A stretch of 64,000 nucleotides of DNA from Haliotis cracherodii (taxonomy: Eukaryota): assembly GCF_022045235.1 (NCBI RefSeq), contig NW_027266275.1, positions 77,190,001 to 77,254,000 of the forward strand, read 5' to 3'. Shown here in pieces: positions 3,201 through 54,385 of this stretch. Numbering within the stretch: the first letter of the stretch is position 1; the number at the start of each line of letters is the position of its first letter. Both the position numbers and the translations under genes were made by a program. Under the pieces are notes generated by a model, which was not told the origin of the DNA, searched no databases, and saw only the letters and a list, made by a program, of their open reading frames with translations.

Positions 3201-4064
3201 TCTTGACTGAAACTTGTAAACGACACACACCACTAACCTATCTTCTGGGGAGACACATCTCGTACCAACTGGTGTAAGCACTATTCCATCAAAGCGCTGC
3301 TGAAGTCTCAGTGTGCGGACATAGCCCAGTCGTCCTAGCTTCCTGCCCGAGCATTTCTTGGGGTCACACTGCTCCAAGTCCCACATTGCCAGGGGACACG
3401 GGAATTTGGCCTGAGCAGTGTCTGTGAGATGAACATGACATGTTTCATGGACAAATTGCTAAAATAATAGTTAAAAGTTAGCAAAATTCTAAACATCTTT
3501 GCATACATTGTATAGTTTGCAATACAGTCCAGCTTGATGCCAAGATAGATGAAGAAATATCCTTATTCAATAAAGAACTTATCATTTTTTAAATATCACG
3601 CTTATTCAATTATGAGTTCAGAAAAAAAAGAATGAGCTGAAAATGTGATAATTCTTCACAATCTAATGTCCAGTTAAATGCATAATCTAAGTTTGTTGTC
3701 ATTATGATAACGATTATGATCAAAGAATCTTAATAAGAGTCTACAACACTCTTAATAAGAGTCTACAACACATGATCATTATCAGAAATCATGGCACCAA
3801 TATTATTTAGCTGCATATCTGTTTGCAAATTTTGAGTAACATTTTATTCACATAAATTATGTGATTTATCATGTTAATAAATCCTATACTTATAAATCTA
3901 TAAGTATTACCATCAACAGCTGCTTGAAGATTTTCTGAAAATCTTTCTGGGTCAAATTTTGAAGTTCTGTTTTTCCGATGATCATTTTTTGAATGGTGAT
4001 GACTACCTCCCTTGCCTTGCTTCCCATGTGGTTTATCCTGCTTGTGACCTTTGCTCTTCCCCAT
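208..4064 (-). CDS. TSR3: 18S rRNA aminocarboxypropyltransferase Tsr3; 5 coding exons visible, last exon(s) probably left of the window
   Basis: Exons 4064-3911, 3421-3238, 2571-2378, 1368-1189, 280-208 with GT/AG ends and matching phases. Translation has [58 protein letters not shown] and [11 protein letters not shown], typical of Tsr3. Confidence 0.95.
880..1144. repeat. 33-bp minisatellite, ~8 copies, TSR3 intron 4
   Basis: Unit ttgggtccagggtataattatgtcattatacga; explains ORFs 874..1263, 886..1116 and 905..1144. Confidence 0.95.
1838..2010 (-). mobile_element. Partial copy of tRNA-derived SINE family A
   Basis: Shares gtcagcttgatgtgggaggaaagcctgaagtgatgcag and the (tgag)n tail with 4443-4722. 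Confidence 0.75.
2630..2850 (-). mobile_element. Degenerate copy of non-tRNA retroposon family B
   Basis: (gttt)n tail then gccacactccgcaatattccagctata, as in 57030-57269. Confidence 0.7.
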
Positions 4065-8400: not shown

Positions 8401-11400
8401 ATAGATTCTAGACAAGAAATAACATCCTGACTTGTGGGCAACTTTTAGAACTAAAGAATTCAAGGTCACATGCCCATAGAAGACTGTAATAGTCGATACA
8501 GGACACCTATCAATATGTTCAAGTAGAAAGTTCATTCATGAACTGTTACAGTGTTTTTGTGATGGAACATGTTGCATGTTATTCTCATGATTCCGAGAGT
8601 GACACCTGGTGAACTACTTTGGCGACTTTTTTTATATTTCTTGGTTTACGGATGCGCCACTCTTTCAAGGTCCAAATGTTGAAAAAACATAAAAATACAT
8701 ATTACTCTTTTTTTGTTACCGCAGATCTTTACTTTGAGAAATGCATATAAAGTTCAAACAAAAAAGATTTTGTTTCCTTGTTGAGTGTAAAGCAAAGGGA
8801 AGTCACTCTAATATTTCTAGCTGGGATCCTTCTCTGATACCATCAAAGTGTGTCAAAGCAAAGCACAGTGGTAACCAGTTTAATCGTTGTCCATGCTGCC
8901 AAAATGGCGACGTCTTTCATGCATTTCACCATGACATGAATATTCTTATGTTGCCATTTGTGCACAAGCTGTGTGCCAGGGGCATAATGAAATGTACTTG
9001 AGTTGTATACTGAGTTGCTTTCTTTCGTTACTCCAGAATATTTTTTTAAAGATGTACCTACCTAACATTTTAGGACAAAAGTCAAGTAAAGAAAATTGAG
9101 GAGTTTTTTTTGTTTTTTTTAATTTGCCAGCTCACTATTGAAATGAGTTTGAAATCCGTAAACCAAGAAATTAAAAAGAATGTCGCCATACTGGTGTTTG
9201 AAAAGTTGAATTGCAGTAAGCTCACAATTCCTAACATATGTTTTACACATTTATGCAAAGTTAGACTACAATGTCTTCCCCTGCTTGTTGTCAGGTGTTC
9301 TTCAGGTGCAGCAACCACAGCCATGTCACTAAAGTGTCCGAGCCTCACACCTGTCAGTATCACATGGACTTCCTGACCCCCCTGGTCTGCCACAACCACT
9401 CCATGCTGGTGTACCCCACCCTAGCGCGGGAACTGCAGGGGGAGTGGGACAGGGTTGAGGGGGAGCTTGTCAGGGAGGAAATTACTCAACAGGTAAGACA
9501 TGTGTTGGTATGCATCATGGTGAAGGAATATTGGGAATTCTTTGTCTAGAGTTCTGTCCCTTAGCCATGCCAGAAACCTGTGATTGTTAGTTTAAATCTC
9601 AGATTTGCCCTGAATACAATATAACTGAAATACTTCCACATTAAGCTGACACACTGTGATAAAACTGAAATACTGTTTAAAGCAGCATTACACCAAAACT
9701 TGATGACTATAAGAATTTGGATGTTGAACATTTGAGCACAACACAATTTAGATCAATATGTTTGCTCTATCAGTCTATAGCTGTTGTTGTTTTTCTTCAT
9801 GTCTCTAAAGTATGATGTTTTTATTATGGCATTCATTGTGAATGGTTAATGGTGTGTCTGTTTCAGGGCTACAAGAAAAAATTACGAAAAATATTTGAAG
9901 ATGCTGGATATTATCTGTCAAAAGAAAAACATAAAATACTTTCCAAAGTACCAGAGATTAAAAAGGAAGAACCAGCTAAGCCTGTGGAGGAGCCAAAGGG
10001 AGAGTTCTCATCGATGCAAAAATGTACAGAGGTAAGTATGTATAGCTTACACAACATGCTCTATGTTGACCAACTGACATATTGCTGACCCGTGACATTA
10101 CAGACAGATTGCTGACCTGTGACATGACTGGTAGATTGCTGAGCTGTGAAGTGACTGACAGATTGCTGACCCGTGACATGACTGGTAGATTGCTGAGCTG
10201 TGAAGTGACTGACAGATTGCTGACCTGTGACATGACTGGTAGATTGCTGACCTGTGACATGACTGACAGATTGCTGACCTGTGACATGAGAGACAGATTG
10301 CTGACCTGTGACATGACTGACAGATTGCTGACCTGTGACATGACTGACAGATTGCTGACCTGTGACATGAGAGACAGATTGCTGACCTGTGAAATGAGAG
10401 ACAGATTGCTGACCTGTGACATGACTGGTAGATTGCTGACCTGTGACAGACTGCTCACCTGTCATAACTTACACAACATGCTGTACATTGACCAACTGTG
10501 ACAGATTGCTGACCTGTGACATGTCTGGTAGATTGCTGACCTGTGACATGACAGACAGATTGCTGACCTGTGACATGAGAGACAGATTGCTGACCTGTGA
10601 CATGAGAGACAGATTGCTGACCTGTGACGTGACTGACAGATTGCTGACCTGTGACATGAGAGACAGATTGCTGACCTGTGACGTGACTGACAGATTGCTG
10701 ACCTGTGACATGAGAGACAGATTGCTGACCTGTGACGTGACTGACAGATTGCTGACCTGTGACGTGACTGGTAGATTGCTGACCTGTGACAGTTTGCTGA
10801 CCTGTGACGTGACTGACAGATTGCTGACCTGTGACGTGACTGGTAGATTGCTGACCTGTGACAGTTTGCTGACCTGTGACGTGACTGACAGATTGCTGAC
10901 CTGTGACGTGACTGGTAGATTGCTGACCTGTGACATGAGAGACAGATTGCTGACCTGTGACATGAGAGACAGATTGCTCACATGTGACGTGACTGACAGA
11001 TTGCTGACCTGTGACGTGATTGACAGATTGCTGACCTGTGACGTGACTGATCGATTGCTGACCTGTGACATGAGAGACAGACTGCTGACCTGTGACATGA
11101 CAGACAGATTGCTGACCTGTGACATGACAGACAGATTGCTGACCTGTGACATGACTGATTGCTGACCTGTGACGTGACTGATAGATTGCTGACCTGTGAC
11201 GTGACTGACAGATTGCTGACCTGTGACGGGACTGATAAATTGCTGACCTGTGATGTGACATGACAGATTGCTGACCTGTGACGTGACTGACAGATTGCTG
11301 ACCTGTGATGTGACAGATTGCTGACCTGTGACATGACAGATTGCTGACCTGTGACATGACAGATTGCTGACCTGTGACCTGACTGATAGATTGCTGACCT

Positions 11401-12600
11401 GTGATGTGACTGACAGATTGCTGACCTGTGACATGACAGATTGCTGACCTGTGACGTGACTGATCGATTGCTGACCTGTGACGTGACTGATTGCTGACCT
11501 GTGACTGACAGATTGCTGACCTGTGACATGACAGATTGCTGACCTGTGACGTGACTGAACGATTGCTGACCTGTGACGTGACTGATTGCTGACCTGTGAC
11601 TGACAGATTGTTTTACCTGTGATGTGACAGACAGATTGCTGACCTGTGATGTGACTGACAGATTGCTGACCTGTGACATGACTTATAGATTGCTGACCTG
11701 TGACATGACAGATTGCTGACCTGTGACGTGACCGGTAGATTGCTGACCTGTGACATGACTTGTAGATTGCTGACCTGTGACATGACTTATAGATTGCTGA
11801 CCTGTGACATGACCAGTAGATTGCTGACTTGTGACGTGACTGATAGATTGCTGACCTGTGACATGACCAGTAGATTGCTGACTTGTGACGTGACTGATAG
11901 ATTGCTGACCTGTGACGTGACTGATAGATTGCTGACCTGTGACGTGACTGACAGATTGCTGACCTGTGACATGACAGATTGCTGACCTGTGACAGATTGC
12001 TGACCTGTGACGTGACAGATTGCTGACCTGTGACATGACTGATAGATTGCTGACCTGTGACGTGACTGATAGATTGCTGACCTGTGACATGACAGATTGC
12101 TGACCTGTGACATGACTGATAGATTGCTGACCTGTGACATGACTGGTAGATTGCTGACCTGTGACATGACTGACAGATTGCTGACCTGTGACTTACAGAT
12201 TGCTGACCTGTGACATGACTGATAGATTGCTGACCTGTGACGTGACTGATAGATTGCTGACCTGTGACGTGACTGACAGATTGCTGACCTGTGACGTGAC
12301 TGACAGATTGCTGACCTGTGACATGACTGGTAGATTGCTGACCTGTAACGTGACTGATAGATTGCTGACCTGTGACGTGACTGACAGATTGCTGACCTGT
12401 GACGTGACTGACAGATTGCTGAAAGACTCTGTGAGACAAAGGTGTGTCATTCTGTTTTACAGGAAGTCACCAAGTTACGAGAGGAGCTTGCCCAGCTGAA
12501 AGAAGGGCTGCTAGTACGAGGGATCAAGGAGTTCGAGCTAAGTAATAATAAAGGTGAGGAGGTCAAGGGAGGTGATAACTCCAGCATAATCCGTGTGTAA
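5442..12600 (+). CDS. GNPTG: N-acetylglucosamine-1-phosphotransferase subunit gamma (MRH domain), 8 exons
   Basis: Exons 5442-5496, 5967-6021, 6433-6567, 7149-7232, 8181-8274, 9295-9492, 9867-10031, 12463-12600 (TAA), all GT/AG and in phase. Hydrophobic signal peptide, then [69 protein letters not shown] and IFEDAGY, matching GNPTG. Confidence 0.95.
6161..6385 (+). mobile_element. Non-tRNA retroposon family B, full 5' head, internally deleted
   Basis: Starts gacccgtgaagatccggggtagaataggtcttcagcaacccatgc; ends gctggaatattgctgag...ttaaacaacaaacaaac. Confidence 0.85.
10073..12421. repeat. 27-bp minisatellite (with 23- and 19-bp variants) filling GNPTG intron 7
   Basis: Unit gacagattgctgacctgtgacatgact over ~2.35 kb; source of the low-complexity ORFs between 9976 and 12499. 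Confidence 0.97.
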
Positions 12601-28111: not shown

Positions 28112-28261
28112 NNNNNNNNNNNNNNNNNNNNNNNNNNNNNNNNNNNNNNNNNNNNNNNNNNNNNNNNNNNNNNNNNNNNNNNNNNNNNNNNNNNNNNNNN
28201 NNNNNNNNNNNNNNNNNNNNNNNNNNNNNNNNNNNNNNNNNNNNNNNNNNNNNNNNNNNNN
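28112..28261. other. Assembly gap (150 N)
   Basis: Run of n; contiguity across it is scaffold-level only. Confidence 0.99.
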
Positions 28262-29117: not shown

Positions 29118-29450
29118 CTGTGTGTACATAGTGGAATGACTTTAACACCTTAACATTTATAGTTTGTTTCTGAATACGTCAAGTTATGTTTACTGTTGAA
29201 GCATTGGGCTGTTGTTTTCTGTCGTGAGGTGGTGTATGATGTTGAGGCCATTCAGTAGTACAGTGGATACTGCCATCTCTTATCATTCTGCAGTCCTAAG
29301 TTTGCTTCTTTGAATAGGTGCAGTCTGAGATGTCACTTAATAGTGACAATAGTTTCACTTAGCTACAGTATCTTCCCAGATGTGAAGAGCCCTACACTGT
29401 TTGAGGTATCATTGATCTTCAGCATTTTTCTGCTGTGGTCAAAATATTAT

Positions 29451-29850
29451 TGTTTGTTTGTTGTTTAACGCCGCACTCAGCAATATTCCAGCTATATGAC
29501 GGCGGTCTGTAAAAAATCGAGTCTTGACCAGACAATCTAGTGATTGATATCATTTGCATCGATCCACGTTATTGGCGGATACAGAGGGGGTGGGGGTGGG
29601 GGGTGGGGGGTGGGGGTATTTCTGTATAAATTACCACCAAAGACAATAAATAGATCTTAATTGTGCACCCCCGCCCCCCCTTTTCAAAAAAGCTGTATCC
29701 GCCCATGATTGGTATACGATGACATGCACCATCCAAGTCAGCGCGCCTGACCACCTGATCCCGTTAGTCGCCTCTTACGACAAGCATAGTAGTCTTTTAC
29801 GGAAAGCATGGGTTGTTGAAGACCTATCATAACTCGGATCATTACGGATC
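29451..29850 (-). mobile_element. Family B retroposon with an internal G-rich insertion
   Basis: Tail gtttaacgccgcactcagcaatattccagc; head reverse complement near 29760-29850; unrelated insert ~29570-29705. Confidence 0.8.
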
Positions 29851-30639
29851 TAAACAAGGTGTTAAAGCATGTAATGGAGTAATTTAGAAGACATTTTTTA
29901 CAGGATAACTTAAATTATTAATCATTATTTCACATTTCATAAATAGATTTGTTTTCTCCCGCCACGTTATTGCTGGAATATTGCTAAAAGCGGCGTAAAC
30001 CATACTCACTCACTCATATACAGAAGAGCACGGAGGCGTCTGTAATTCGGATGAAACGTGTATACTTATCATTATGTGTCGAGAGTTAAATGCAGTGGTG
30101 AGCCAGGGCCCACTTGCACAAAGCGTTTTGTGCAAGTCGGCCCATGTGTGGTTAAGTTTAGTATACGTGTGGATTCTTATCTTGAGTGCCAAGATGGCAG
30201 GAATGAGTACATAGATATCTACACAACAGATCATGCACCATCACGATCTCGCACTGAAATACAATCTGGCAGCATTTATCTTCAAGGTCAAGTAACAGGA
30301 CAAGTAAAGCAGGTCAAGGTAATGTCGGCACCTTTCGTTTCTAATGTCACAACTTACCGTAAATATTATTCGTTTAGAGGCCACGGATTAAAAAGCATAC
30401 CTGCCGGATCTATTCCCTGTAAATACAGCTCTGTGCTGTCACTAAATGTGTAGCTATTACACAGTTATTGACCTTCTATCCCCGTTGTTTACCTGGCTGA
30501 AACTAATAGATGCCGACAGGCATTAAATCCAGCCAACGGTAGAAGTCAGGGAATTAATGGTAAGGTGAGGTGGAATGGAGTTTAACGTCGCGTTCAAGAT
30601 TATTGCACTTACACAGTGAAGTACATGCACGTATATGTG

Positions 30640-30920
30640 TGTGTGTGGCTGCTTGTCTTAGTCCGGATTAATGCCGATTCTTTAGTGCTAGCACCGCTGA
30701 GATCCATGAGATACCATGTCTCAATTTAACATGAATACCCCAGACACAGTATTCTGACTCCGAGCCGACCGGTCCTTACTTTAGCCCTAAATGCCAAGCG
30801 CCAGACAGGATAGCAACAAGTACCATTTTTTTACGTCTTTTATAGTATGACGCAGCCGGGTATCGGGCCGACCTACCGCTCCCCGGGCAGACGCTCTATC
30901 CACTAGACCACAGATGTAGT
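30640..30920 (-). mobile_element. tRNA-derived SINE-like element (family D)
   Basis: Minus strand gtggtctagtggatagagcgtctg tRNA-like head; body related to the SINE at 51589. Confidence 0.55.
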
Positions 30921-31070
30921 TCGACTAGTAAAGAATGATGTTATTGGATGATGAACTTATAATCGAGGAAATACGGTACTGATAATCTTATCTCGTCTTG
31001 TTCATCTAGATGTGTTGTAGTTCAGAGTGAAGTTCTGTTATTTGTGGGCTAGCTTCCACTTTGAAGAACG

Positions 31071-32360
31071 ATGTCTGGAAAAGCGCGAGAGTTCCCCCGC
31101 GTCAAGGCAGTGAGGGCCTATACAATGGCAGCTAGCATGAAGGATCAGGGATCCGACTGCCATGACGTTGTAGACGATCACTGGATTAACGGAGGACTGG
31201 CACCAATCGCCAACCCTATGTCAGGCTATCTTCAATACAGAGCTTTCAGGAAATCCTGGGGAATCAACGCACTTGGAACTTTGGTAGTTGAAGTTGAAGC
31301 AGACGATGGAACTACGGGCGTTGGCGTCACCATCGGCGGAGAACCCGGATGTTACATCGTCGAGCGGCATCTAAGTAGATTTGTTGAAGGTCAAGATCCT
31401 CGTGATGTGGAACTTATGTGGGATCAGATGTTCCGAGCTACACTGAACTATGGGCGGAAGGGGTTGCCTATACAAGCTATAAGTGCCGTGGATTTAGCTC
31501 TGTGGGATCTTCTGGGCCGTTTGCGGAATGAGCCAGTGTATGCGTTGCTTGGCGGGAAAACTAAAGATCGCCTGCCAGTCTATTCAACAACGGGTCGCCC
31601 TGATCTCGCCAAGGAATTTGGGTTTGTCGGAGCGAAGATTCCATGTCCATACGGTCCTGATGAGGGAGATGAAGGATTGAGGAAAAACGTCGAGTTCTTC
31701 AAAGGATGGAGAGAGAAAGTTGGACCCGATTTCCCATTGTCTCTGGACTGTTATATGGCTCTGACAGTCCCTTATGCTATTCGTCTAGCAAAGGAATTAG
31801 AGCCACTTGGTCTGAAATGGATTGAAGAATTTCTGCCTCCAGACGATTATGAAGGCTACGGCGAGGTGAGGAAGGCACTGAGAGGTTCGAAAGTTCTTCT
31901 AACGACAGGAGAACACGAATATACAAGGTATGGATTCAGACAACTTCTTAGTTCAAGATGTGTCGATGTTATTCAACCAGACATCACATGGCTTGGAGGG
32001 ATTACAGAAGCCAGGAGGGTGGTTGCCATGGCGTCAGCGCATGACGTCTTGGTCATTCCCCATGGTTCAAGCGTCTACTCGTATCATCTTCAGTATGCCT
32101 TCAGGAACTGTCCACTAGCGGAATTCATCAATCTGAGTCCGAAAGCCGACAAGATTACGCCCTATTTTGGAGGGATATTTCCTGACGAACCTCTACCTAA
32201 AGATGGCTTCATTGACCTTCCACCAAGAGCTGGATTTGGTGTGACATTGTGTAAGGACAATCTGACCAGACCGTACCAAAGGTCAGAGAAAGAGTCTTCC
32301 CAACAGGCAAACCAGAACATAGAGAGAAAAGTACCAGAGAAGGCCTCTTTTCCATTTTAA
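31071..32360 (+). CDS. L-rhamnonate dehydratase-like protein (RhmD/Lra3 family, mandelate racemase subgroup of the enolase superfamily), single coding exon
   Basis: 429-aa ORF with DCHD..DHWI, IANPMS, SWGINALGTLVVEVEA, SAVDLALWDL, GAKIP, LDCYM, WIEE, TGEHE, QPD, IPHGSSVYSYH and AEF, collinear with E. coli RhmD as recalled. AATAAA at 32512; candidate 5'-UTR intron 30560-31009. Confidence 0.9.
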   Translation: MSGKAREFPRVKAVRAYTMAASMKDQGSDCHDVVDDHWINGGLAPIANPMSGYLQYRAFRKSWGINALGTLVVEVEADDGTTGVGVTIGGEPGCYIVERHLSRFVEGQDPRDVELMWDQMFRATLNYGRKGLPIQAISAVDLALWDLLGRLRNEPVYALLGGKTKDRLPVYSTTGRPDLAKEFGFVGAKIPCPYGPDEGDEGLRKNVEFFKGWREKVGPDFPLSLDCYMALTVPYAIRLAKELEPLGLKWIEEFLPPDDYEGYGEVRKALRGSKVLLTTGEHEYTRYGFRQLLSSRCVDVIQPDITWLGGITEARRVVAMASAHDVLVIPHGSSVYSYHLQYAFRNCPLAEFINLSPKADKITPYFGGIFPDEPLPKDGFIDLPPRAGFGVTLCKDNLTRPYQRSEKESSQQANQNIERKVPEKASFPF

Positions 32361-32855
32361 GATTGACAGTTGGATTGCTCGGTTAATTGCTTGTGTGTCA
32401 GCATCTATGCTCAATACTTTGTAAAATAACAGATGTTGAGACTACCATTCGATTATGATGTAAAATGAAAGCATACTGCAGCTTCTAAAATGCCACTTAA
32501 AGACATTGAAAAATAAATGTCAAGAAATTGTAGTCTTTGTTTTGTTGCACATCTATTAGTGAAGACAACAGCAATTCCTTCAGGCATAAAGCATCAATAC
32601 CATAGTTGGGTGTTCAGTAAACAGGAGTTTGAACATATGTGATCGTTGTTTATAAGAACCTGTTGTTTATTTGACCCTGTTACAAACTAGGGTCCTAATT
32701 ACTGTTCAACAGACCTGTGGTGATAAGGGGCAAGAGTATAGGAGCTTGCAAGAGACGACAAAATGGATCATGTTGTTGGGCTTGGCAACATCATATCATA
32801 TATAGGACATCTGTTATATGCAGGAGATACAGAGTATCCTGACACGTGGAATATT

Positions 32856-33097
32856 GTTTGTTTGTTTATTGTTTAACGCTACTATCAGCAATATTCCAGC
32901 AATAAGAGGACGATCTGTAAATAATTGAGGCTTGACCGGACAATGAAGTGAGTGATATCATGAGCATCGATCTATACAATTAGGATATGATGACATGCAT
33001 CAACCAAGTCAAGGAGGCTGACCACACGATCCTGTTAGTCGCCTCTTACGGTAAATATGGGTTGCTGAAGACCTGTTCTACCCCGAATCTTCATGAG
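32856..33097 (-). mobile_element. Family B retroposon
   Basis: (gttt)n tail and gttagtcgcctcttacg...gttgctgaagacctgttctaccccgaatcttca. Confidence 0.8.
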
Positions 33098-34222
33098 TTG
33101 ACAGATGGCATAAGTACTACAGTTTAACGATTATGAGTGGATGAAACCGACCACTGTCTTCTCATTTGCATGTTCCACAAAGGTTACAGTCTCTAAAAGG
33201 GGGACTAGGCAGCTTATTGGCAGTCCCAGGCAATTTGATTCAAATACTTCAGTCTCATTACAATCATATCTTATTACACACTCCCACTACACAAAGATGT
33301 GAGAACATCCCATCACAGGTCAAGCCAGATCAAGATTGCAAATACCTGACACACCACTTTGCTCGTCTGCTGGGTCTATTTTTCGGATGTTGATTGATGT
33401 AGTTGTTGATGATTACCCTGATGACACACAGACGGCCACAGGTGGATGTAATTACGTCTAGGTCAAGGAAGAAACTGCATCAAACCTTGGACATTATCTC
33501 CCACTGAAAGGCAATGCTCATTGGTTGCTCATTTTTTTTGTGAAACCCAACAACTCACTCACTCTTGAGGATTAATGAATGAATAGGAACACTCACACAC
33601 TACTTGTATAAATCATAGTTTATTCATGTGATTCCAGCATTATATTTAAATATATATATATGTTGTAAAGTGACTGAAATATTTAGGCTTTTTGGAAATT
33701 GCCTTTGTGAAAATTCCAGTCATTTTACAACTTGACTGGAACAAATATATACTGGAACAAATGAGCCCAGATTTGAAGACTCAAATTGTAGATTTAGGAC
33801 AAAGCTTTGCTTGCAAAATAATTCTGCCAAGTTCAGTATTTCCAAAAAGTGTGAAAAAAGGAGCAAATTTGGCATTTTAAAAGGAAATAATCTGTTAAAA
33901 AATAAATGGACGGACAAACACATTAACATATCACATTACCTAAATTTAACTTAATAACTTATATACAATAGATACCTTTAATGTACAGAACAAAATATAC
34001 AGACATTTTCATAGTACAGATTATTTCACACAAGGTCTTGACCTTAGCATTCAAACCAGAATGATATTGATAGAACATAAATCTCAAACAGACCGTCAAC
34101 TACAAGCAATGCATTAAACAGTAGGTGATGACTTGTTAGAAAAACTGTTCCAGATACTGATTGGCAGGCAAAAAATCAATCCTGTAGGTCCTCGATTACA
34201 TGCATCGATGCTGGTGAATGCA

Positions 34223-37200
34223 TTAATCCTCATCATGGGGCACCCCCCGGGAGCTGAGAGCGATGGTGACGTTCCTCAATGCTGGTTGTACGTGTGGGAA
34301 CTCCTGGTTGAGCCTGTCCACGATGGTGCTGAGCGCCTGCATGCGATCTATCTGCTTGTTGTGTTCTGTCTCCAGGGAGGACTCCGACTTGCACAGCATG
34401 GTGTACTTGCCATCCTTCACTTGCTGGTAATACTTGTGTTTCTGCTGCTTGGCAATAAGATCCTTCATATTCTGGAACATATTCAATCATATTGGAATTA
34501 CATTTATTAACCATATTTTCTTGAGTATAGAGTACCCCTTACCCCCTCTAGGGGATGCAGTATTTTGGAAAAAGGATTTTTTTAGCCTTATGCGCAGTCA
34601 GATATTTTCGACTCATTTCAGGTGCAGTCATGATATGAAACATCAATTAAGAACTTTGCCATTGTGTCATTGTGTGAATAAAGGCAACTGCAAATTGCAA
34701 ATTCAAATAAATATATTATGCATTTGAATATTAATAATATTGTAATTACATCCGAATTGACTCCATGATCTATGACATTGTTTGTTTACCTCTCTCCTGT
34801 GAACAATGGATGCTATCACTTTATTTCATTATATATTTTATATTTTTGGATGGTAATTGCTAAATCAATTTTCATTCACAACGTATGCAGATTAATCTGT
34901 GTCTATCTACCTAGGAATCTCCACATCAAACCAGCGATGATATCCTTACCACACCTTACAGAATATCATTAAGGTACATTCTCAGCCAAATCCATTACTT
35001 TTCATTGCAGCAAGCTGTAATTGTTGTATTACGTTATGATTGATTAAAATAACAACACTGTCAAAACATGTGAATAATAAAGTCTCACAGTGGAGTGCTG
35101 TCTGTGACTGGACATGTGATCATTTCCTCTATATAAAACCTTTGTGACACAACTTCATTTTTCCCTGCCCTGATACAGGATGCAGTCATAGACAATTTTA
35201 TTAATTAGATATGAATGTGTCCTCTTTGAAACATACTCCCTGGAGCTGAAAACACGATATATTCATATATTTCTTAGATAATGAGAGTTGACACAATAAC
35301 AATTTTTATTTTAAGAATATGCTAATCAGTGGGGGGGGGGGGGGGGGGGGGGGGGGGAAGGGGGGGGAATGAAAAAATGATACGAAAGAGGGGTGGCCAA
35401 GCAAAATTCACAACTATAGGGGTAATGAAAAAATGAAATTTGAATATTATTTTGAGTCTGGTCATTTGCTATAGGCAGGGAGGGGGGAAAATATGATACA
35501 GATCTACAACCAATTCCACCAGCCCACACACTCTCTATAAGATATGACCAGTCCCTTAATTTAATTCAAACACTTTCATGCATAGTTCAAATACAGTACG
35601 CTGAACTAGGGCTGGGACGAGCCCAAATTTACTACCCGGGTACCTGATCCCCTATTACCTGGCCCTACCCGGGTACCCACTGCAGGTCTCAAGAGTTGGG
35701 AACAAAATGTCTGATTGAGAAGTGTTTTATCGTAGCCCTGGCCAAAACTATTTAGATACATGTATCAAACGATCAGATCAGGCGTACACTGAAGTTGACT
35801 GAAGGTTTACCTTTACTCAGACATACACAAGTCAAAAGGATTGTGTCAGAAAGAAATGCGAACATTAGCGACTTGTGGAGTTTTTGTTATCAAACAATAT
35901 ATCATGTGACTAACCACGGGACTGGGTAGTCCTGTGGGTACCCGGGTCCTACTCAGGACCCACCCGACCCTAGTACCCGAGTTACCCGTCCCAGCCCTAC
36001 GTTGAGCCCTTACATAAAGTGCTATTTCCTTGGGCTGAATGCTTTAAGCCTACATACACACTAATCCACAAGAGGATAAATATCAATGTTCCAGACGCAG
36101 CAGCCACTACACCATGATAAGACACAATCCACACCTTTAACTTCACATCAAGGAGCCTCTCGATGTCCCCATCCAGGGTGTCTGCAGAGCCCTGGAGTTG
36201 CTGACAGTTGACCTGCTTCTCCTCGAGCTGCCCACTCAGCTCCTGCTGGTGATCGCGCAGCTCATGAATGTCACTGTCACAGCTTGAAGCATCCTGTAGT
36301 ATAGAGATGGCACACAGAGTGAGTGAGTGACTAGGAGAGAGAGGGAGGGAGCGAGAGTGAGTGAGTGAATGATAGAGGGAGTTTAACGCCACAGTCAGCA
36401 ATATCCCAGATATATGATGGCAATCTGTACATAATGAACCTGAACCAAACAATCCAGTGATAGATATTGTGAACAATGATTCACGCTGTTGGGTATGATG
36501 ACACGCTATATACTAAGTCACCAAACCTGACCACACCATATACTTGGTCATCTCTTATGACCTGCATGAGCTGCTGGGACCTGACCACATGATATACTTG
36601 GTCATCTCTTATGACCTGCATGAGCTGCTGGGACCTGACCACATGGTATACTTGGTCATCTCTTATGACCTGCATGAGCTGCTGGGACCTGACCACATGA
36701 TATACTTGGTCATCTCTTATGACCTGCATGAGCTGCTGGGACCTGACCACATGATATACTTGGTCATCTCTTATGACCTGCATGAGCTGCTGGGACCTGA
36801 CCACATGGTATACTTGGTCATCTCTTATGACCTGCATGAGCTGCTGGGACCTGACCACACGATATACTTGGTCATCTCTTATGACCTGCATGAGCTGCTT
36901 GGACCTGACAACACGATATACTTAGTCATCTCTTATGACCTGCATGAGCTGCTGGGACCTGTTCTAACCTGGAATCCCAACAGGGTCCGTAATGGTTAAA
37001 GTGGTAGTCAACAAGGAAATGTCATCAGTGCTTCCTGAATCTTAATTCTGATCCCTGGTCAGTGATATATCACTTTCATGTCTGCCTGTATTAGTGTGAC
37101 CCAAGCAAACCAGCAACTGATGGCATGAGCAGCGATCTATGCAACTGGAGTACCATGACACATGACAGCCAGGCCACACATTCTTGTTACCAACCGATCC

Positions 37201-40200
37201 TCGCTGGTCAGCTTTTAGTACAATCATGGGGTAATGGCGAGTTCATTGTAATTAGCCCTAGAACAGGCAAACAATCTAACAGGAGCACTGTTCGAGTGAG
37301 TGTGAGTGTGAATTGGGCTTAACACTGCTTTTAACAGTATTCCAGTCATACCACAGCGTGTCAGCTCAATGTGGAAGGAAAGCCTGAAGTGATGCAGATC
37401 TGACATTTACCACTTTGGTGAAACCCCCAAACCCACAAGCATGATGCTGACAAACCTGGAAACAAAATTCAGCATGTCAGCTCAATGTGGGAGGAAAGCC
37501 TGAAGTGATGCAGATCTGACATTTACCGATTTGGTGGAACCCCAGACCCACAAGCATGGTGCTGACAAACCTGGAAACAAAATTGGGCATTTGAACACAC
37601 AATCATAGGTTTAGGGCTGGCCCAAGGGAGACAACTCTGCACAGTGAATTACCGCGCCTTAGGTGACTAGGCCCTCCATGCCCCAAGCACTGTTCGAAGT
37701 AATCATAGTTCAATGACACATTTTCAAAGTGACCCATTCTAGTACCATAATCTCAGCCGCCATTAAGGTAACCTTTACAAGCACTAGGGTTCTAATGTGC
37801 ACAAGGCTACCAACTTAGTCACATCCGAATGACTTCCCTGATTTGCATTTTCAAACAAAATTGACAGAGGAAGAAACAAAACTTACATTTGTTGTTTGTT
37901 TTATCTTTCTACGATGCTCAGCCATCTGTCTCTCAAACGTTCCCTTGGTAACAACTTTCTGCTTCATCTTGGACTGAGAGTCACCTCGGGTAACGATGGT
38001 GTCTCTCCTGAATATATAGATGGATGGATTTAACAGGAAATATAAACAACATACTAACTGGAACAAGTCAAGTCTTGTTTTAAAGCCACTTTTACCATTA
38101 TTACAGGATTAACCAGTGGACTTCCACAAACACCCCTCTGGCCATCCCCCCCCAAACCCCAAACCATCAACATCAAAAACACAACTTCGCAACTTTGTCA
38201 TATTTACTGTTACAGCAAATGTGTTATGAGATATCTAACAGGTAATGAGAACTCCTACAAATACATTACACAGCTGACATACCTGGAGACGGCCTTCTCC
38301 ATGTCCTGGATCATCTTCTCCTGTTGCTTCATCAGCTGACTGTACCTGACCTGCATCCGATGGATCTCGGACTTCATGGCTCTGATCTCCCCCTGTCCAA
38401 TCTCAGAGTCTACAGCTGCCCGGGTCTCCCTGGCAAGCTGGGTCTTCTTCTCCCACAACATGATTTGACGCCTGAAACAAGAAATATTGGATACTTGAAA
38501 AAACTATATTTTTCCTTTAGCAGAGGATGTTAAAATATGAATAAAATTGCCAACCATCTGTCTCTACTCACTCTGCCTCCACTCAGACTGTTCAGTAGCC
38601 TCACTACCACCTGTCTCTACTCAGACTGTTCAGTAGCCTCCCTACCACTTGTCTCTACTCAGGCTGTTAAGTAGCCTCCATACCACCTGTCTCTACTCAG
38701 ACTGTTCAGTAGCCTCACTACCACCTGTCTCTACTCAGGCTGTTCAGTAGCCTCCCGTCCACCTGTCTCTACTCAGGCTGTTAAGTAGCCTCCCTTCCAC
38801 CTGACTCTACTCAGACTGTTCAGTAGCCTCCCTACCACTTGTCTCCACTCAGGCTGTTAAGTAGCCTCCCTTCCACCTGTCTCTACTCAAGCTGTTAAGT
38901 AGCCTCCCTTCCACCTGACTCTACTCAGGCTGTTAAGTAGCCTCCCTACCACCTGTCTCTACTCAGGCTGTTAAGTAGCCTCCCTACCACTTGTCTCTAC
39001 TCAGGCTGTTAAGTAGCCTCCCTTCCACCTGACTCTACTCAGGCTGTTAAGTAGCCTCCCTACCACTTGTCTCTACTCAGGCTGTTAAGTAGCCTCCCTA
39101 CCACCTGTCTCTACTCAGGCTGTTAAGTAGCCTCCCTACCACTTGTCTCTACTCAGGCTGTTAAGTAGCCTCCCTTCCACCTGACTCTACTCAGGCTGTT
39201 AAGTAGCCTCCCTACCACCTGACTCTACTCAGGCTGTTAAGTAGCCTCCCTACCACTTGTCTCTACTCAAGCTGTTAAGTAGCCTCCCTTCCACCTGACT
39301 CTACTCAGGCTGTTAAGTAGCCTCACTACCACCTGTCTCTACTCAGGCTGTTAAGTAGCCTCCCTACCACTTGTCTCTACTCAGGCTGTTAAGTAGCCTC
39401 CCTTCCACCTGACTCTACTCAGGCTGTTAAGTAGCCTCCCTACCACTTGTCTCTACTCAGGCTGTTAAGTAGCCTCCCTACCACCTGACTCTACTCAGAC
39501 TGTTCAGTAGCCTCCCTACCACTTGTCTCTACTCAGGCTGTTAAGTAGCCTCCATACCACCTGTCTCTACTCAGACTGTTCAGTAGCCTCACTACCACCT
39601 GTCTCTACTCAGGCTGTTCAGTAGCCTCCCGTCCACCTGTCTCTACTCAGGCTGTTAAGTAGCCTCCCTTCCACCTGACTCTACTCAGACTGTTCAGTAG
39701 CCTCCCTACCACTTGTCTCCACTCAGGCTGTTAAGTAGCCTCCCTTCCACCTGTCTCTACTCAAGCTGTTAAGTAGCCTCCCTTCCACCTGACTCTACTC
39801 AGGCTGTTAAGTAGCCTCCCTACCACCTGTCTCTACTCAGGCTGTTAAGTAGCCTCCCTACCACTTGTCTCTACTCAGGCTGTTAAGTAGCCTCCCTTCC
39901 ACCTGACTCTACTCAGGCTGTTAAGTAGCCTCCCTACCACTTGTCTCTACTCAGGCTGTTAAGTAGCCTCCCTACCACCTGTCTCTACTCAGGCTGTTAA
40001 GTAGCCTCCCTACCACTTGTCTCTACTCAGGCTGTTAAGTAGCCTCCCTTCCACCTGACTCTACTCAGGCTGTTAAGTAGCCTCCCTACCACCTGACTCT
40101 ACTCAGGCTGTTAAGTAGCCTCCCTACCACTTGTCTCTACTCAAGCTGTTAAGTAGCCTCCCTTCCACCTGACTCTACTCAGGCTGTTAAGTAGCCTCAC

Positions 40201-52200: not shown

Positions 52201-54385
52201 GGGTTAACATCACTTATTTCTCTATATGTTATATGTGTATGTTATATGTTCACACTGCTCGTTTATTTTCTTGTGAAAATGCCTGTTTGTGAATCATTGT
52301 TGTGCGTGCGTTGTAACCATGTTTTGCTCTTTGTTCTTAGAATAAAAAAATGTCTGACGTGGAAATGTCCCTGGTTTCAACCCCCTCTACCCCTGCTCCT
52401 CGGAGTTGCGGGATCTCAGTGAGCTAGCACTATAAATTGGCATCAGTCTGGACTAGTACATGTACAAGCAGCCACACAAACATACAAATGTACATGCATG
52501 TTGCTATATATAAGTGCAATAATCTTGGACGCGACGTTAAACACAATTTCACCTCACCTATTACTACTTACTGACTTTTATTAACATGATTAGTAATTAA
52601 ATAGTTTGGTTTACAGGACAATAATTCAACAACTGTATCATTCATGATTATCATTTGCTCATCATACTGTTGCACAAATCATACATTACAAAATAAGGCA
52701 TATCAAAGTCAATACAACTATTTAGACCAGTGATGCTGTTCAGATTGCTTGGAAAATATAAAAAAATGTAATACCTCTTTTAGAGCTTCTGTTGTCACCT
52801 TGGAGACAACATCCTGAACTTTAGAAGAAGAGGGTCTGGAAAACAGGAAAATATAAAGGATGAGAATGAACATGAAATTGAAAAATATATCAGAAACATA
52901 AAAGCAAAGATCATGGGAGTGAATTGGTGTTTAATTAGGGTTTTATCAGTCTTGTGATTTCCACTTGCATGGAGTCAGGGAAATACATTGAAAAAATACA
53001 TGAAAGATCTGACGTCCAAGTAATGAGAGTAACATTGTGAACACATTAACACCATACCTTGCCAGTTAAATGGTATTGAACACAATGTGCCTGTTTAGAA
53101 GACTCAAGCAGTGATAGAAACTAACATTTTAGTCCACTAGTCCTTCTACTCAGTTGACGATGTAACATGTACGTGAGACAGGTTTTGTTACTTGTAAGAG
53201 TAACTATCTGACTGCATGTGCATGGACAACGGATTTCTGGACAAAAACGGGTCTACAATAATGATAACATGATGATGATAACATATAAGAAAACCCTTAA
53301 ATATTGCAAATGTCTACTTGTCCTTATACCTGTTGGGCAGTTTGGCAAGGACTATAGGACTAGTGCCAATTTCTATCACTGATGTGTCATCAAGTTCTAG
53401 GTTGGGAAGAATGTTTAAAAGGGTGTCATCAAGTTCTAGGTTGGGAAGAATGTTTAAAAGGGTGTCATCAAGTTCTAGGTTGGGAAGAATGTTTAAAAGG
53501 GTGTCATCAAGTTCTAGGTTGGGAAGAATGTTTAAAAGGGTGTCATCAAGTTCTAGGTTGGGAAGAATGTTTAAAAGGGTGTCATCATGTTTTGTACTGA
53601 GAAGGATGTTTCAGGGGGTGTCATCAAGTTCAATGTTTGTCATTATCTGTACAATACTGAACATCGGGCAATTCTTCTACCCTTAAGACACAGCACGAGT
53701 GTTATGGATTGTAAACAAACAGCAGAGGCAATCACTTCATTATATGCACTACATGTTAAATACACTGTTATTTATGTTTGTTAGCCAAGTAGTAATGGAA
53801 CATTGTGAAATGAAAAGTATGTCATCCACAGACTTTCACAATGGCAGATGCCATGCTGGGTTGTTTGTTTGGTTTTTGTTTAACCCTGCACTCAACAATA
53901 TTTCTATATGACGGCGGTCTGTAAATTATCAAGTCTGGACCAGACAATCCAGTGATTGGTATCATACGCATCGATCTAGGCAATTTGGATTCGAGGACCA
54001 CGCAATCCCGTTAGTCTTTAATATTTTCAAACCTAAGTCCTTGCTTATTAGGTTGGACAGTGTGAAATCCACTTGCCAAAAATTCTTTAACCTTACTTAT
54101 TTTTTGTGAGAATCAGACGGAAAGAAAGGTAACAGCAGTAAGATGTACCTAGCTCTTACATTATTTACTGTGATAATCAGAAAGTCAGTCTCTTGGAAAA
54201 TAAATTCATCACTATCTCCGTCGCCCATTTGTCATAAATGTTACCTTTGACACAGATCTGGACACCATTATTATTGAAAAAAGAACATGCATAGTTTCAG
54301 ATTTAAAGCTATAAACAAATGCAAGATATTTTCGTAAATATATCCGCAATGAGTTCACAACAAACCTTTCCTGCTTGTCCGCCAT
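34223..54385 (-). CDS. CCDC40: Coiled-coil domain-containing protein 40 (axonemal 96-nm ruler), 20 exons
   Basis: Exons 54385-54366, 52835-52775, 51446-51341, 50600-50097, 47168-47118, 46615-46329, 45977-45894, 45687-45468, 44797-44640, 44487-44347, 44258-44155, 43795-43552, 43151-42969, 42341-42096, 41582-41369, 40838-40577, 38471-38283, 38007-37887, 36293-36135, 34471-34223; phases consistent throughout. Hallmarks [63 protein letters not shown] and [11 protein letters not shown]. Exons 1-5 rest on phase and composition only. Confidence 0.92.
35607..35999. mobile_element. hAT-like MITE
   Basis: TIR tagggctgggacg / cgtcccagcccta; degenerate 8-bp TSD cgctgaac / cgttgagc. Confidence 0.7.
36527..36961. 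repeat. 57-bp minisatellite, ~7.5 copies, inside a family B retroposon (~36379-36988, -)
   Basis: Unit cctgaccacatgatatacttggtcatctcttatgacctgcatgagctgctggga..., a diverged version of the family B segment cctgaccacccgatcccgttagtcgcctcttacgacaagcatgggttgctgaagacct. Confidence 0.9.
37296..37685 (-). mobile_element. Family A SINE with internal ~115-bp duplication and TSD
   Basis: gtcagctcaatgtgg...ctgacaaacctggaaacaaaatt occurs twice; TSD agcactgttcga at 37284-37295 and 37686-37697. Confidence 0.85.
38556..40576. repeat. 38-bp minisatellite, ~53 copies, filling CCDC40 intron 16, derived from the exon 16/donor junction
   Basis: Unit ctgtctctactcaggctgttaagtagcctccctaccac; period checked at 39001/39039. 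Confidence 0.97.
41229..41328. repeat. 20-bp tandem repeat x5, CCDC40 intron 15
   Basis: gttaaagattatatccaaca repeated. Confidence 0.9.
41757..42105. repeat. 50-bp minisatellite, ~7 copies, each containing the CCDC40 exon 14 donor junction
   Basis: Unit ccccagcagagacatgtccagtagacatcaccccaagtattgagaactta; starts at 41821, 41871, 41921, 41971, 42021. Confidence 0.95.
44818..45215. repeat. (TGAG)n microsatellite with gttgttca interruptions
   Basis: Direct reading; source of the THSL-repeat ORFs. Confidence 0.95.
46798..47072 (+). mobile_element. Full-length family A SINE with TSD
   Basis: Collinear with the reverse complement of 4443-4722; TSD tcacactctcac at 46786-46797 and 47073-47084. Confidence 0.88.
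50417..50597 (-). repeat. Coding 33-bp repeat ([10 protein letters not shown][D/A]) x~5.5 in CCDC40 exon 4
   Basis: gctgatgttggacgtgaatcagccttaggggta repeated in frame. Confidence 0.9.
51589..52557 (+). mobile_element. Composite SINE carrying a ~590-bp LTR-like insert between two copies of its 3' segment
   Basis: 16-bp TSD ctattactacttactg at 51573-51588 and 52558-52573; 51691-51819 repeated at 52413-52549; insert starts TGT (51820) and has AATAAA at 52341. Confidence 0.7.
53110..53381. mobile_element. MITE with cagtgatagaaa TIRs; shorter inverted relative at 63574-63703
   Basis: cagtgatagaaa...tttctatcactg; shared internal ttgggcagtttggcaaggactataggactagtg. Confidence 0.7.
53383..53630. 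repeat. 39-bp minisatellite x~6 directly after the MITE, CCDC40 intron 1
   Basis: gtgtcatcaagttctaggttgggaagaatgtttaaaagg repeated. Confidence 0.93.

What the first reader, a model, noticed from the sequence alone, without database searches (positions are those of the whole stretch)
31071..32360. Intact single-exon RhmD/Lra3-family sugar-acid dehydratase among intron-rich animal genes
Seen: the four identified neighbours have 5-20 coding exons, but this 429-aa ORF has no intron, keeps the expected catalytic set (K in GAKIP, metal ligands D/E/E in LDCYM/WIEE/TGEHE, D in QPD, H in IPHGS), has a polyA signal and a candidate 5'-UTR intron holding a host SINE. Known: the family is characterised in bacteria and fungi, in non-phosphorylative L-rhamnose catabolism, with fungal L-galactonate dehydratase as a relative; vertebrates have no recognised rhamnose pathway. 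Inference: a horizontally acquired or retroposed gene that lets an algal grazer catabolise L-rhamnonate (ulvan) or L-galactonate (agar/porphyran), implying a little-described animal pathway for algal sugars.
Basis: partly seen in the sequence, partly recalled or inferred. Interest (0 to 1): 0.8.

Follow-up and report, generated by a model that had tools for sequence, protein, structure and literature searches.

The report
Old, intact abalone rhamnonate dehydratase gene
The abalone gene is a real, expressed, single-exon L-rhamnonate-dehydratase-type enzyme gene, but it was not recently acquired or tied to algal grazing: the same gene occurs across molluscs, other spiralians, sponges and choanoflagellates, and public databases already annotate it, although no one has studied its function in animals.

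Summary
Window 31071-32360 (+) is an uninterrupted 429-codon ORF, single copy in a Haliotis genome. It scores 519.5 bits on the NCBIfam L-rhamnonate dehydratase equivalog (cut-off 393). All five RhmD catalytic residues are present (D226, E252, E281, D304, H331). RNA-like contigs from four runs cover it, and it shows mostly synonymous differences between abalone species.

The interpretation mostly fails.
- Orthologues of 64-86% identity occur in gastropods, bivalves, a chiton, a brachiopod, annelids, a flatworm, all sampled sponge classes, choanoflagellates and some marine protists.
- The closest prokaryotes found are only 50-54% identical.
- The eukaryote clade is well supported (99/97), and the gene tree follows gastropod and bivalve relationships.
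- The clade shares a 25-residue C-terminal tail that the prokaryotic relatives lack.

So the gene is old and vertically inherited, not a transfer into an algal grazer. RefSeq already calls the 99%-identical H. rufescens protein "L-rhamnonate dehydratase-like".

Three points stay open.
- The intronless coding sequence seems shared with other molluscs, by inference, while some other eukaryotes have introns.
- The 5'-UTR intron is unproven.
- Pathway partners were not identified.

The animal function is uncharacterised, and that is the only novelty left.

The parts
31071..32360 (+). Uninterrupted coding sequence (429 codons plus TAA) of an RhmD/LRA3-type acid-sugar dehydratase. Mg ligands D226, E252, E281. 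His331-Asp304 dyad. Eukaryote-specific C-terminal tail at residues 405-429, ending FPF.
   Evidence: covered end to end by RNA-like contigs of 4 runs
31011..31070 (+). 5' untranslated stretch directly upstream of the ATG, with A at -3. RNA-like contigs begin at 31013, 31034 and 31041.
32361..32541 (+). 3' UTR with AATAAA at 32512-32517. Contigs end at 32495-32503 and no depth is seen from 32542. No A-run or flanking duplication follows.
30560..31010 (+). Candidate 5'-UTR intron (ATG|GTAAGG ... pyrimidine tract, TCTAG|A). The splice sites are plausible, but the junction is NOT shown by any listed contig.
   Evidence: sequence; no bridging piece listed
30570..30915 (.). Host high-copy SINE-like repeat of about 345 bp inside the candidate intron. 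It shows the locus is embedded in host DNA.
   Evidence: at least 8698 candidates, best copies 82-83% identical; depth in the thousands; ARAGORN finds no tRNA gene here

Best explanation
This is the abalone orthologue of an old eukaryotic branch of the L-rhamnonate dehydratase (RhmD/LRA3) family in the enolase superfamily. It was inherited vertically at least since the molluscan ancestor, and probably since the common ancestor of animals and choanoflagellates. It is kept in sponges and spiralians and is apparently lost elsewhere in animals.

**Mechanism, inferred from the conserved residues and the solved bacterial and fungal enzymes.** Mg2+ held by D226, E252 and E281 binds the carboxylate and 2-OH of a 6-deoxy or related L-acid sugar. 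His331, polarised by Asp304, removes the C2 proton. The 3-OH then leaves, giving a 2-keto-3-deoxy acid; with L-rhamnonate that is 2-keto-3-deoxy-L-rhamnonate.

**State of the gene.** It is transcribed from a single coding exon and is under purifying selection.

**Introns.** The intronless coding sequence is not an abalone novelty. Full-length single ORFs of close relatives sit on megabase host contigs of a Gigantopelta-like snail and several bivalves. That reading is inferred from prokaryote-style gene calls.

**Pathway.** The fate of the product in abalone is unknown. The most economical guess is a dehydrogenase plus FAH-type hydrolase route shared with the L-fucose pathway that starts with ENOSF1.
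For: **Family and residues**
- Searches give the family and the catalytic residues.
- All 28 sampled clade members hit NF011968 at E<=1e-120.

**Distribution**
- Searches show Haliotis rufescens at 99% identity. They also show Gigantopelta, Patella, Lottia, Pomacea, Nucella, heterobranchs, 11 bivalves, Liolophura, Lingula, Owenia, Capitella and Macrostomum.
- Sponges: Corticium, Sycon, Halichondria, Dysidea, Amphimedon. Seven choanoflagellates are also present.
- Nearest prokaryotes found are 50-54% identical.

**Trees**
- Careful tree: eukaryote clade 99/97, Gastropoda 99/86, Haliotis+Gigantopelta 99/96.
- Quick tree: Bivalvia 90, Mollusca 86, Mollusca plus Lingula 82. The one fungal row falls outside.

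**Shared derived feature**
- The C-terminal tail is present in all 48 eukaryote rows and absent from 12 prokaryote rows.

**Genome and expression**
- Single copy. A host SINE lies 100 bp upstream of the exon.
- RNA-like contigs of four runs from four coded organisms cover 31013/31034/31041/31071 to 32443-32503. The unique flanks have zero depth.
- Of the listed differences between abalone transcripts, 14 are synonymous and 3 non-synonymous.

**Single ORFs in other molluscs**
- P0005: 432 aa, 91% identical to Gigantopelta, on a 1.09-Mb contig.
- P0027: 428 aa, bivalve, on a 2.27-Mb contig.
- P0291: 436 aa, mytilid, on a 1.2-Mb contig.
- P0029 and P0032 as well.

**Bacterial context**
- The closest bacterial homologues sit in rhamnonate operons: LysR-RhmD-permease-HpcH aldolase, RhmD-MFS-amidohydrolase-aldolase, and RhmD-TRAP-SDR-FAH.
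Against: - Substrate specificity was not measured. E. coli RhmD is promiscuous (my recollection of Rakus et al. 2008, which could not be read here).
- An RhmA-type aldolase and an LRA2-type lactonase were not found in the genome with single bacterial queries.
- The FAH-family hit is simply FAHD1, and the SDR hits are generic. No pathway is demonstrated.
- Dinoflagellate, cercozoan and pelagophyte sequences sit among the holozoan ones with weak support. Strict vertical descent across all eukaryotes is therefore not shown.
- No cnidarian, ecdysozoan or deuterostome appears among the best 120 hits. Absence is not proven.
- The runs are only guessed to be RNA.
Confidence: 0.8

Rival explanations
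1. Ancient retroposition or reverse-transcriptase-mediated intron loss. An intron-bearing ancestral animal gene, as in the sponge-like contig, was replaced by a processed copy in the stem of molluscs or spiralians. That copy later gained a 5'-UTR intron.
For: - The intron-bearing orthologue L052 has at least 5 introns, and its exons are most like demosponge proteins.
- L053 and L054 carry canonical introns after about residues 75, 105 and 156.
- L050 has two short introns.
- The abalone coding sequence is uninterrupted.
Against: - No parental copy exists.
- There is no poly(A) remnant or flanking duplication, although an event this old would leave none.
- Intron positions do not coincide between L052, L053/L054 and L050. 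That fits independent gains better.
- Single ORFs also occur in protist members: L025, L026, L031/L033.
- The taxa of L053-L055 cannot be fixed.
Confidence: 0.25
2. Recent horizontal transfer from a bacterium or fungus into the abalone lineage. The transfer would provide catabolism of algal sugars.
For: - Single-exon gene among multi-exon neighbours.
- The family is best known from bacteria and fungi.
Against: - Best prokaryotes found are 50-54% identical, against 64-86% for animals and choanoflagellates.
- The gene tree follows mollusc relationships.
- The eukaryote-specific tail is shared.
- Non-grazing holders include vent, freshwater and land snails, bivalves and sponges.
- A host SINE lies upstream, and base composition is like other exons.
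- The fungal row lies outside the clade.
Confidence: 0.02
3. The enzyme is a dehydratase of the RhmD clade, but its physiological substrate in animals is another acid sugar. Candidates are L-mannonate, L-lyxonate, D-gulonate and L-galactonate. It would then not mark a rhamnose pathway at all.
For: - No LRA2-type lactonase or RhmA-type aldolase was found with bacterial queries.
- The eukaryote clade is a separate branch with its own C-terminal tail.
- RhmD promiscuity, from my recollection of Rakus et al. 2008.
Against: - The score is well above the curated equivalog cut-off.
- The best solved matches are annotated rhamnonate dehydratases from three distant groups: Azotobacter 462 bits, Gibberella 437 bits, E. 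coli and Salmonella 386 bits. These bracket the clade.
- The closest bacterial homologues sit in rhamnonate-type operons.
Confidence: 0.3

Closest known systems
Azotobacter vinelandii L-rhamnonate dehydratase (PDB 2oz3/3ekg) and the gammaproteobacterial and Thermoproteales homologues found here
   Same: - Best solved match: 462 bits, aligned over residues 8-404.
- Same two domains, the same Mg ligands and the same His-Asp dyad.
- The bacterial homologues lie in rhamnonate operons.
   Different: - The prokaryotic homologues found are only 50-54% identical; I did not compute a percent identity for 2oz3.
- The prokaryotic homologues lack the 25-residue C-terminal tail.
- They have an operon context. 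The animal gene stands alone among unrelated genes.
E. coli / Salmonella RhmD (YfaW; PDB 2i5q, 2p3z, 3cxo)
   Same: - The mechanistic reference enzyme.
- D226, E252, E280, D302 and H329 all have counterparts in abalone.
- The NCBIfam equivalog built on this family is passed.
   Different: - Lower score, 386 bits.
- The partner aldolase of the RhmA type was not found in the abalone genome with one bacterial query.
Fungal Lra3 (Gibberella zeae 3fxg; Scheffersomyces stipitis LRA3)
   Same: - A eukaryotic L-rhamnonate dehydratase of the non-phosphorylative pathway, 437 bits.
- It also carries a C-terminal extension relative to the bacterial enzymes.
   Different: - Not the sister of the animal clade in the one tree that included a fungal row, a partial Verticillium model on a long branch.
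- The tail of that row does not end in the M/F-P-F motif.
- Fungal genes sit in LRA clusters (PMC7532622). Nothing comparable is seen here.
ENOSF1 / FucD L-fuconate dehydratase, the enolase-superfamily acid-sugar dehydratase already recognised in animals
   Same: - Same superfamily and reaction type.
- The abalone genome also has it, as two tandem copies on contig C34.
   Different: - A different subfamily.
- The abalone ENOSF1-like genes are multi-exon, whereas this gene has a single coding exon.

Membership tests
L-rhamnonate dehydratase (RhmD/LRA3), enolase superfamily | N-terminal capping domain plus C-terminal modified TIM barrel (MR_MLE_N and MR_MLE_C) | tested here: met
   Pfam PF02746 at 46.8 bits and PF13378 at 159.2 bits
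L-rhamnonate dehydratase (RhmD/LRA3), enolase superfamily | Mg2+ ligands Asp/Glu/Glu at the ends of strands 3, 4 and 5 (Ec D226, E252, E280) | tested here: met
   D226, E252 and E281 align to them. They are invariant in 48 eukaryote and 12 prokaryote rows.
L-rhamnonate dehydratase (RhmD/LRA3), enolase superfamily | His-Asp dyad as the sole acid/base catalyst (Ec H329 and D302). The residue roles are from my recollection of Rakus et al. 2008. | tested here: met
   H331 and D304 align and are invariant
L-rhamnonate dehydratase (RhmD/LRA3), enolase superfamily | Score above the curated equivalog cut-off | tested here: met
   NF011968 at 519.5 bits against 393. The next family scores 151 bits. All 28 of 28 clade members match at E<=1e-120.
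L-rhamnonate dehydratase (RhmD/LRA3), enolase superfamily | Dehydrates L-rhamnonate to 2-keto-3-deoxy-L-rhamnonate | not testable with these tools
   Needs the recombinant enzyme
Non-phosphorylative L-rhamnose pathway (LRA1-4 or LRA1-3,5,6) | Partner enzymes present: dehydrogenase, lactonase, and either an aldolase or a dehydrogenase plus hydrolase | tested here: inconclusive
   - RhmA-type aldolase and LRA2-type lactonase were not found with single bacterial queries.
- Family scans hit only weak exon matches.
- The FAH hit is FAHD1.
- The SDR hits are generic.
Processed retrogene | Intron-bearing parental copy elsewhere in the genome | tested here: not met
   One match only in 1.18 Gb. The other enolase-superfamily genes are of the ENOSF1 type.
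Processed retrogene | Poly(A) remnant and target-site duplication at the ends | tested here: not met
   No A-run after 32517-32560, and none is evident on reading 30300-33200. No repeat search was run, and an ancient event would leave no trace.
Recent horizontal gene transfer into the host lineage | Nearest relatives lie in the donor group, the gene is absent from sister taxa, and the gene tree conflicts with the species tree | tested here: not met
   - Animals and choanoflagellates are 64-86% identical, against 50-54% for prokaryotes.
- The gene is present throughout Mollusca.
- The tree is congruent with mollusc relationships.

The most novel reading that the evidence does not exclude
Sponges, spiralians and choanoflagellates keep a strongly conserved acid-sugar dehydratase that other animals appear to lack. 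Across the 48 eukaryote rows (animals, choanoflagellates and protists), 112 of 429 residues are invariant. This enzyme would mark a functioning oxidative, non-phosphorylative route for L-rhamnose or a related 6-deoxy sugar in animals. Its product would probably feed the same lower pathway as ENOSF1-dependent L-fucose catabolism. The clade-specific C-terminal tail ending in M/F-P-F would be a eukaryotic adaptation, for example for assembly or targeting.
Probability: 0.3. Interest if true: 0.5.

Novelty: new member of a known kind. Interest (0 to 1): 0.25.

Why it matters
As a case of gene transfer it does not matter, because the evidence points to ordinary vertical inheritance. RefSeq and KEGG-style annotation already name the gene.

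One modest, real gap remains. A highly conserved RhmD-type enzyme is present in sponges, molluscs, annelids, brachiopods, flatworms and choanoflagellates. I found no open paper on its function in animals, and rhamnose catabolism is not a recognised animal pathway.

A simple enzyme assay and a tissue expression survey would show two things. The first is whether marine invertebrates themselves, and not only their microbes, can oxidise algal or bacterial deoxy-sugars. The second is why most other animal lineages seem to lack the gene.

Tried and rejected
1. **Exon structures.** Intron status outside abalone therefore rests on metagenome contigs and on inference from full-length ORF calls.
2. **Representative search.** The 50%-identity representative search returned mostly fragments and no full-length near relative. 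It served only for outgroups and, through cluster look-up, one partial fungal row.
3. **5'-UTR splice.** The 5' UTR of the 86%-identical transcript-like contig L018 does not align to the window. The splice is untested.
4. **Taxa of the intron-bearing contigs.** Exon-by-exon comparison failed for L053-L055, because the protein is too conserved. L052 leans towards demosponges only.
5. **Neighbourhoods of protist contigs.** L025, L026 and L031 gave no pathway genes.
6. **Rakus et al. 2008.** PMC2562705 is not held. The residue roles are from memory and from the alignments.
7. **Literature.** Two searches were badly framed and uninformative.
8. **ESM Atlas.** It returned only generic family clusters.
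9. **The 656-aa ORF at 10.5-12.4 kb.** It is a translated 24-nt tandem repeat, not a gene.
10. **Contamination.** Rejected, because the gene lies on a chromosome-scale contig with a host SINE upstream.

Full report
**What is there**

The window is contig C12:77190001-77254000 of a 1.18-Gb, 80-contig genome. The ORF at 31071-32360 (+) is 429 codons long. It is the only long ORF in its surroundings and occurs once in the genome.

The protein has the two enolase-superfamily domains. It scores 519.5 bits on the NCBIfam equivalog for L-rhamnonate dehydratase, whose cut-off is 393. The next family, galactonate dehydratase, scores 151 bits.

The best solved structures are all annotated rhamnonate dehydratases:
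- Azotobacter vinelandii 2oz3/3ekg, 462 bits
- Gibberella zeae 3fxg, 437 bits
- E. coli and Salmonella RhmD, 386 bits

I counted through the printed alignment to 2i5q. The E. coli Mg ligands D226, E252 and E280 and the dyad D302 and H329 correspond to abalone D226, E252, E281, D304 and H331. These residues and K189 are invariant in 48 eukaryotic and 12 prokaryotic relatives. The catalytic roles of these residues are from my recollection of Rakus et al. 2008; the paper is not held.

**Whose gene is it**

The nearest database protein is "L-rhamnonate dehydratase-like" of Haliotis rufescens, at 99% identity. The best 120 hits are all at least 64% identical. With the cluster look-ups, they include:
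- gastropods of every major group: Gigantopelta, Patella, Lottia, Pomacea, Nucella, Plakobranchus, Elysia, Candidula, Biomphalaria, Lymnaea
- bivalves: Dreissena, Mercenaria, Ruditapes, Sinanodonta, Pinctada, Crassostrea, Mytilus, pectinids
- a chiton, Lingula, the annelids Owenia and Capitella, and the flatworm Macrostomum
- sponges of three classes: Corticium, Sycon, Halichondria, Dysidea, Amphimedon
- seven choanoflagellates
- a few marine protists: pelagophytes, a cercozoan, Symbiodiniaceae

Many holders are not algal grazers. No cnidarian, ecdysozoan or deuterostome is in that list. This suggests loss but does not prove it.

A scan of 185,579 prokaryotic species genomes with patterns drawn from the abalone protein returned nothing closer than 50-54% identity: Terasakiispira, Salinisphaera, Caldivirga, Vulcanisaeta.

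**Trees**

The careful maximum-likelihood tree has 69 rows under LG+C20+F+G4.
- All eukaryotic rows fall on one side of a branch with support 99/97.
- Gastropoda is recovered at 99/86.
- Haliotis plus Gigantopelta is recovered at 99/96.
- In the quick-tree drawings, Patellogastropoda, Caenogastropoda and Heterobranchia are each recovered.

A second, quick tree added a partial fungal row from Verticillium.
- Bivalvia 90, Mollusca 86, Mollusca plus Lingula 82.
- The fungal row falls outside the animal/protist clade, on a long branch, so its place is unsure.

I left seven long-branch representatives and L016 out of the second tree.

All eukaryotic rows also share a C-terminal extension of about 25 residues ending in [M/F/L]-P-[F/L]. 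None of the prokaryotic rows has it. All 28 sampled clade members hit the RhmD equivalog at E<=1e-120.

Together these results refute a recent transfer into abalone. They show vertical descent, at least within Mollusca.

**Introns**

The abalone coding sequence is uninterrupted.

There are two kinds of indirect evidence.

First, full-length proteins of close relatives were called on very long contigs of metagenome assemblies:
- P0005: 432 aa, 91% identical to Gigantopelta, on a 1.09-Mb contig
- P0027: 428 aa, heterodont bivalve, on a 2.27-Mb contig
- P0291: 436 aa, mytilid, on a 1.2-Mb contig
- P0029 and P0032

If those calls are prokaryote-style single ORFs, as I assume, the intronless state is shared by gastropods and bivalves.

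Second, the metagenome scan returned contigs with genuine spliceosomal introns:
- L052: at least 5 introns, with exons most like demosponge proteins
- L053 and L054: introns after about residues 75, 105 and 156, with canonical splice sites
- L050: two very short introns

These exons were compared one by one and never joined. The taxa of L053-L055 cannot be fixed, because the protein is too conserved.

Intron positions do not coincide between these groups. Single ORFs also occur in protist contigs (L025, L026, L031/L033). I therefore lean towards an ancestrally intron-poor gene with lineage-specific gains. Ancient retroposition in the molluscan or spiralian stem remains possible, at about 0.25.

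No parental copy exists. No poly(A) remnant or flanking duplication is visible.

**Expression and gene ends**

Four runs guessed to be RNA, from four coded organisms and four studies, each hold one contig covering the gene:

| Run | Contig span | Differences from the window |
|---|---|---|
| X1 | 31071-32443 | 1 |
| X10 | 31034-32503 | 22 |
| X11 | 31041-32502 | 20 |
| X2 | 31013-31102 and 31188-32495 | 2 and 11 |

- The unique flanks 30288-30448, 32542-32702 and 33347-33507 have zero depth. This fits transcript assemblies and a 3' end just after the AATAAA at 32512-32517.
- Of the listed differences inside the coding sequence, 14 are synonymous and 3 are not.
- No listed contig bridges the proposed 5'-UTR intron (30560-31010). 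The earliest start, 31013, fits an acceptor at 31010 or a start site there. The intron is unproven.
- The repeat inside it (30570-30915) is a host element with at least 8698 candidate copies. No tRNA gene is called there.

**Surroundings**

Neighbours are ordinary multi-exon animal genes:
- TSR3-like domains split over exons at 2367-3458 (-)
- a glucosidase-II-beta-like exon at 9265-9546 (+)
- a coiled-coil gene with a BRE1-like domain split over exons at 40.5-41.7 kb (-)

The region at 10.0-12.5 kb is a 24-nt tandem repeat that mimics long ORFs. The only other enolase-superfamily genes in the genome are two tandem multi-exon ENOSF1/FucD-type genes on C34.

**Function and pathway**

The closest bacterial homologues lie in classic rhamnonate operons:
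- LysR-RhmD-GntP permease-HpcH aldolase
- RhmD-MFS-amidohydrolase_2-HpcH aldolase
- RhmD-TRAP-SDR-FAH hydrolase

I used those partners as queries against the abalone genome.
- The aldolase and the lactonase were not found.
- The FAH query hit FAHD1.
- The SDR query gave only generic exon hits.

So the dehydratase chemistry is well supported by residues and family scores. A complete rhamnose pathway in the animal is neither shown nor excluded.

Established pathway knowledge is that L-KDR and L-KDF converge after C4 oxidation in the Sphingomonas-type route. From this I infer that a lower pathway shared with ENOSF1-dependent fucose catabolism is the most economical guess. It is only a guess.

**Known or new**

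Among the 51 open papers that mention rhamnonate dehydratase, none of the 40 listed concerns an animal enzyme. A zebrafish ENOSF1 paper only cites the family.

The gene is already named automatically in RefSeq for abalone and many molluscs, and as LRA3 in Mytilus. It is a new, uncharacterised member of a known family. It is not a transfer, and it is not specific to algal grazers.

The earlier scan notes near this place concern other features of the window. A note elsewhere in this genome, on an intronless yellow/MRJP array, reached a similar "not horizontal" verdict on other DNA.

Noticed in passing
window 32283-32357 (residues 405-429); alignment: All 48 eukaryotic members carry a C-terminal tail of about 25 residues. 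It ends in a conserved [M/F/L]-P-[F/L] at the very C-terminus. The tail is absent from the 12 prokaryotic relatives, and the one fungal row ends differently. Its function is unknown.
   Followed up: partly
window 10000-12500: A tandem repeat with a 24-nt unit gives overlapping ORFs of up to 656 aa on both strands, with no Pfam hit. The translation is a monotonous 8-residue repeat. It is not a gene.
   Followed up: yes
G000:C34:7035875-7058036 (L003-L005): Two tandem multi-exon ENOSF1/L-fuconate-dehydratase-type genes about 19 kb apart. They are the only other enolase-superfamily genes found in the genome.
   Followed up: partly
L053 (63-1173) and L054 (458-1753): Two metagenome contigs of very different G+C (0.41 and 0.59) carry orthologues. 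Their introns sit at the same two places, after about residues 75 and 156. The organisms are unknown.
   Followed up: partly
window 29322-30126 and 32864-33185: Further high-copy repeats flank the gene. Summed contig depth is in the tens of thousands in all four runs, with many chimeric joints between the two flanks.
   Followed up: no
window 36484-36996, 44565-45243, 50050-50608, 53282-53683: Several short-unit tandem repeats translate into long repetitive open frames on both strands (for example HSLT and PTSATPKA repeats). Some lie within or near the downstream coiled-coil gene.
   Followed up: no
window 2367-3458 (-), 9265-9546 (+), 38258-46661 (-): Neighbouring genes are a TSR3-like ribosome-biogenesis gene, a glucosidase-II-beta-like exon, and a long coiled-coil gene with a BRE1-like domain. 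All are split by introns.
   Followed up: partly
window 28112-28261: A run of N (assembly gap or masked stretch). It was left untouched.
   Followed up: no
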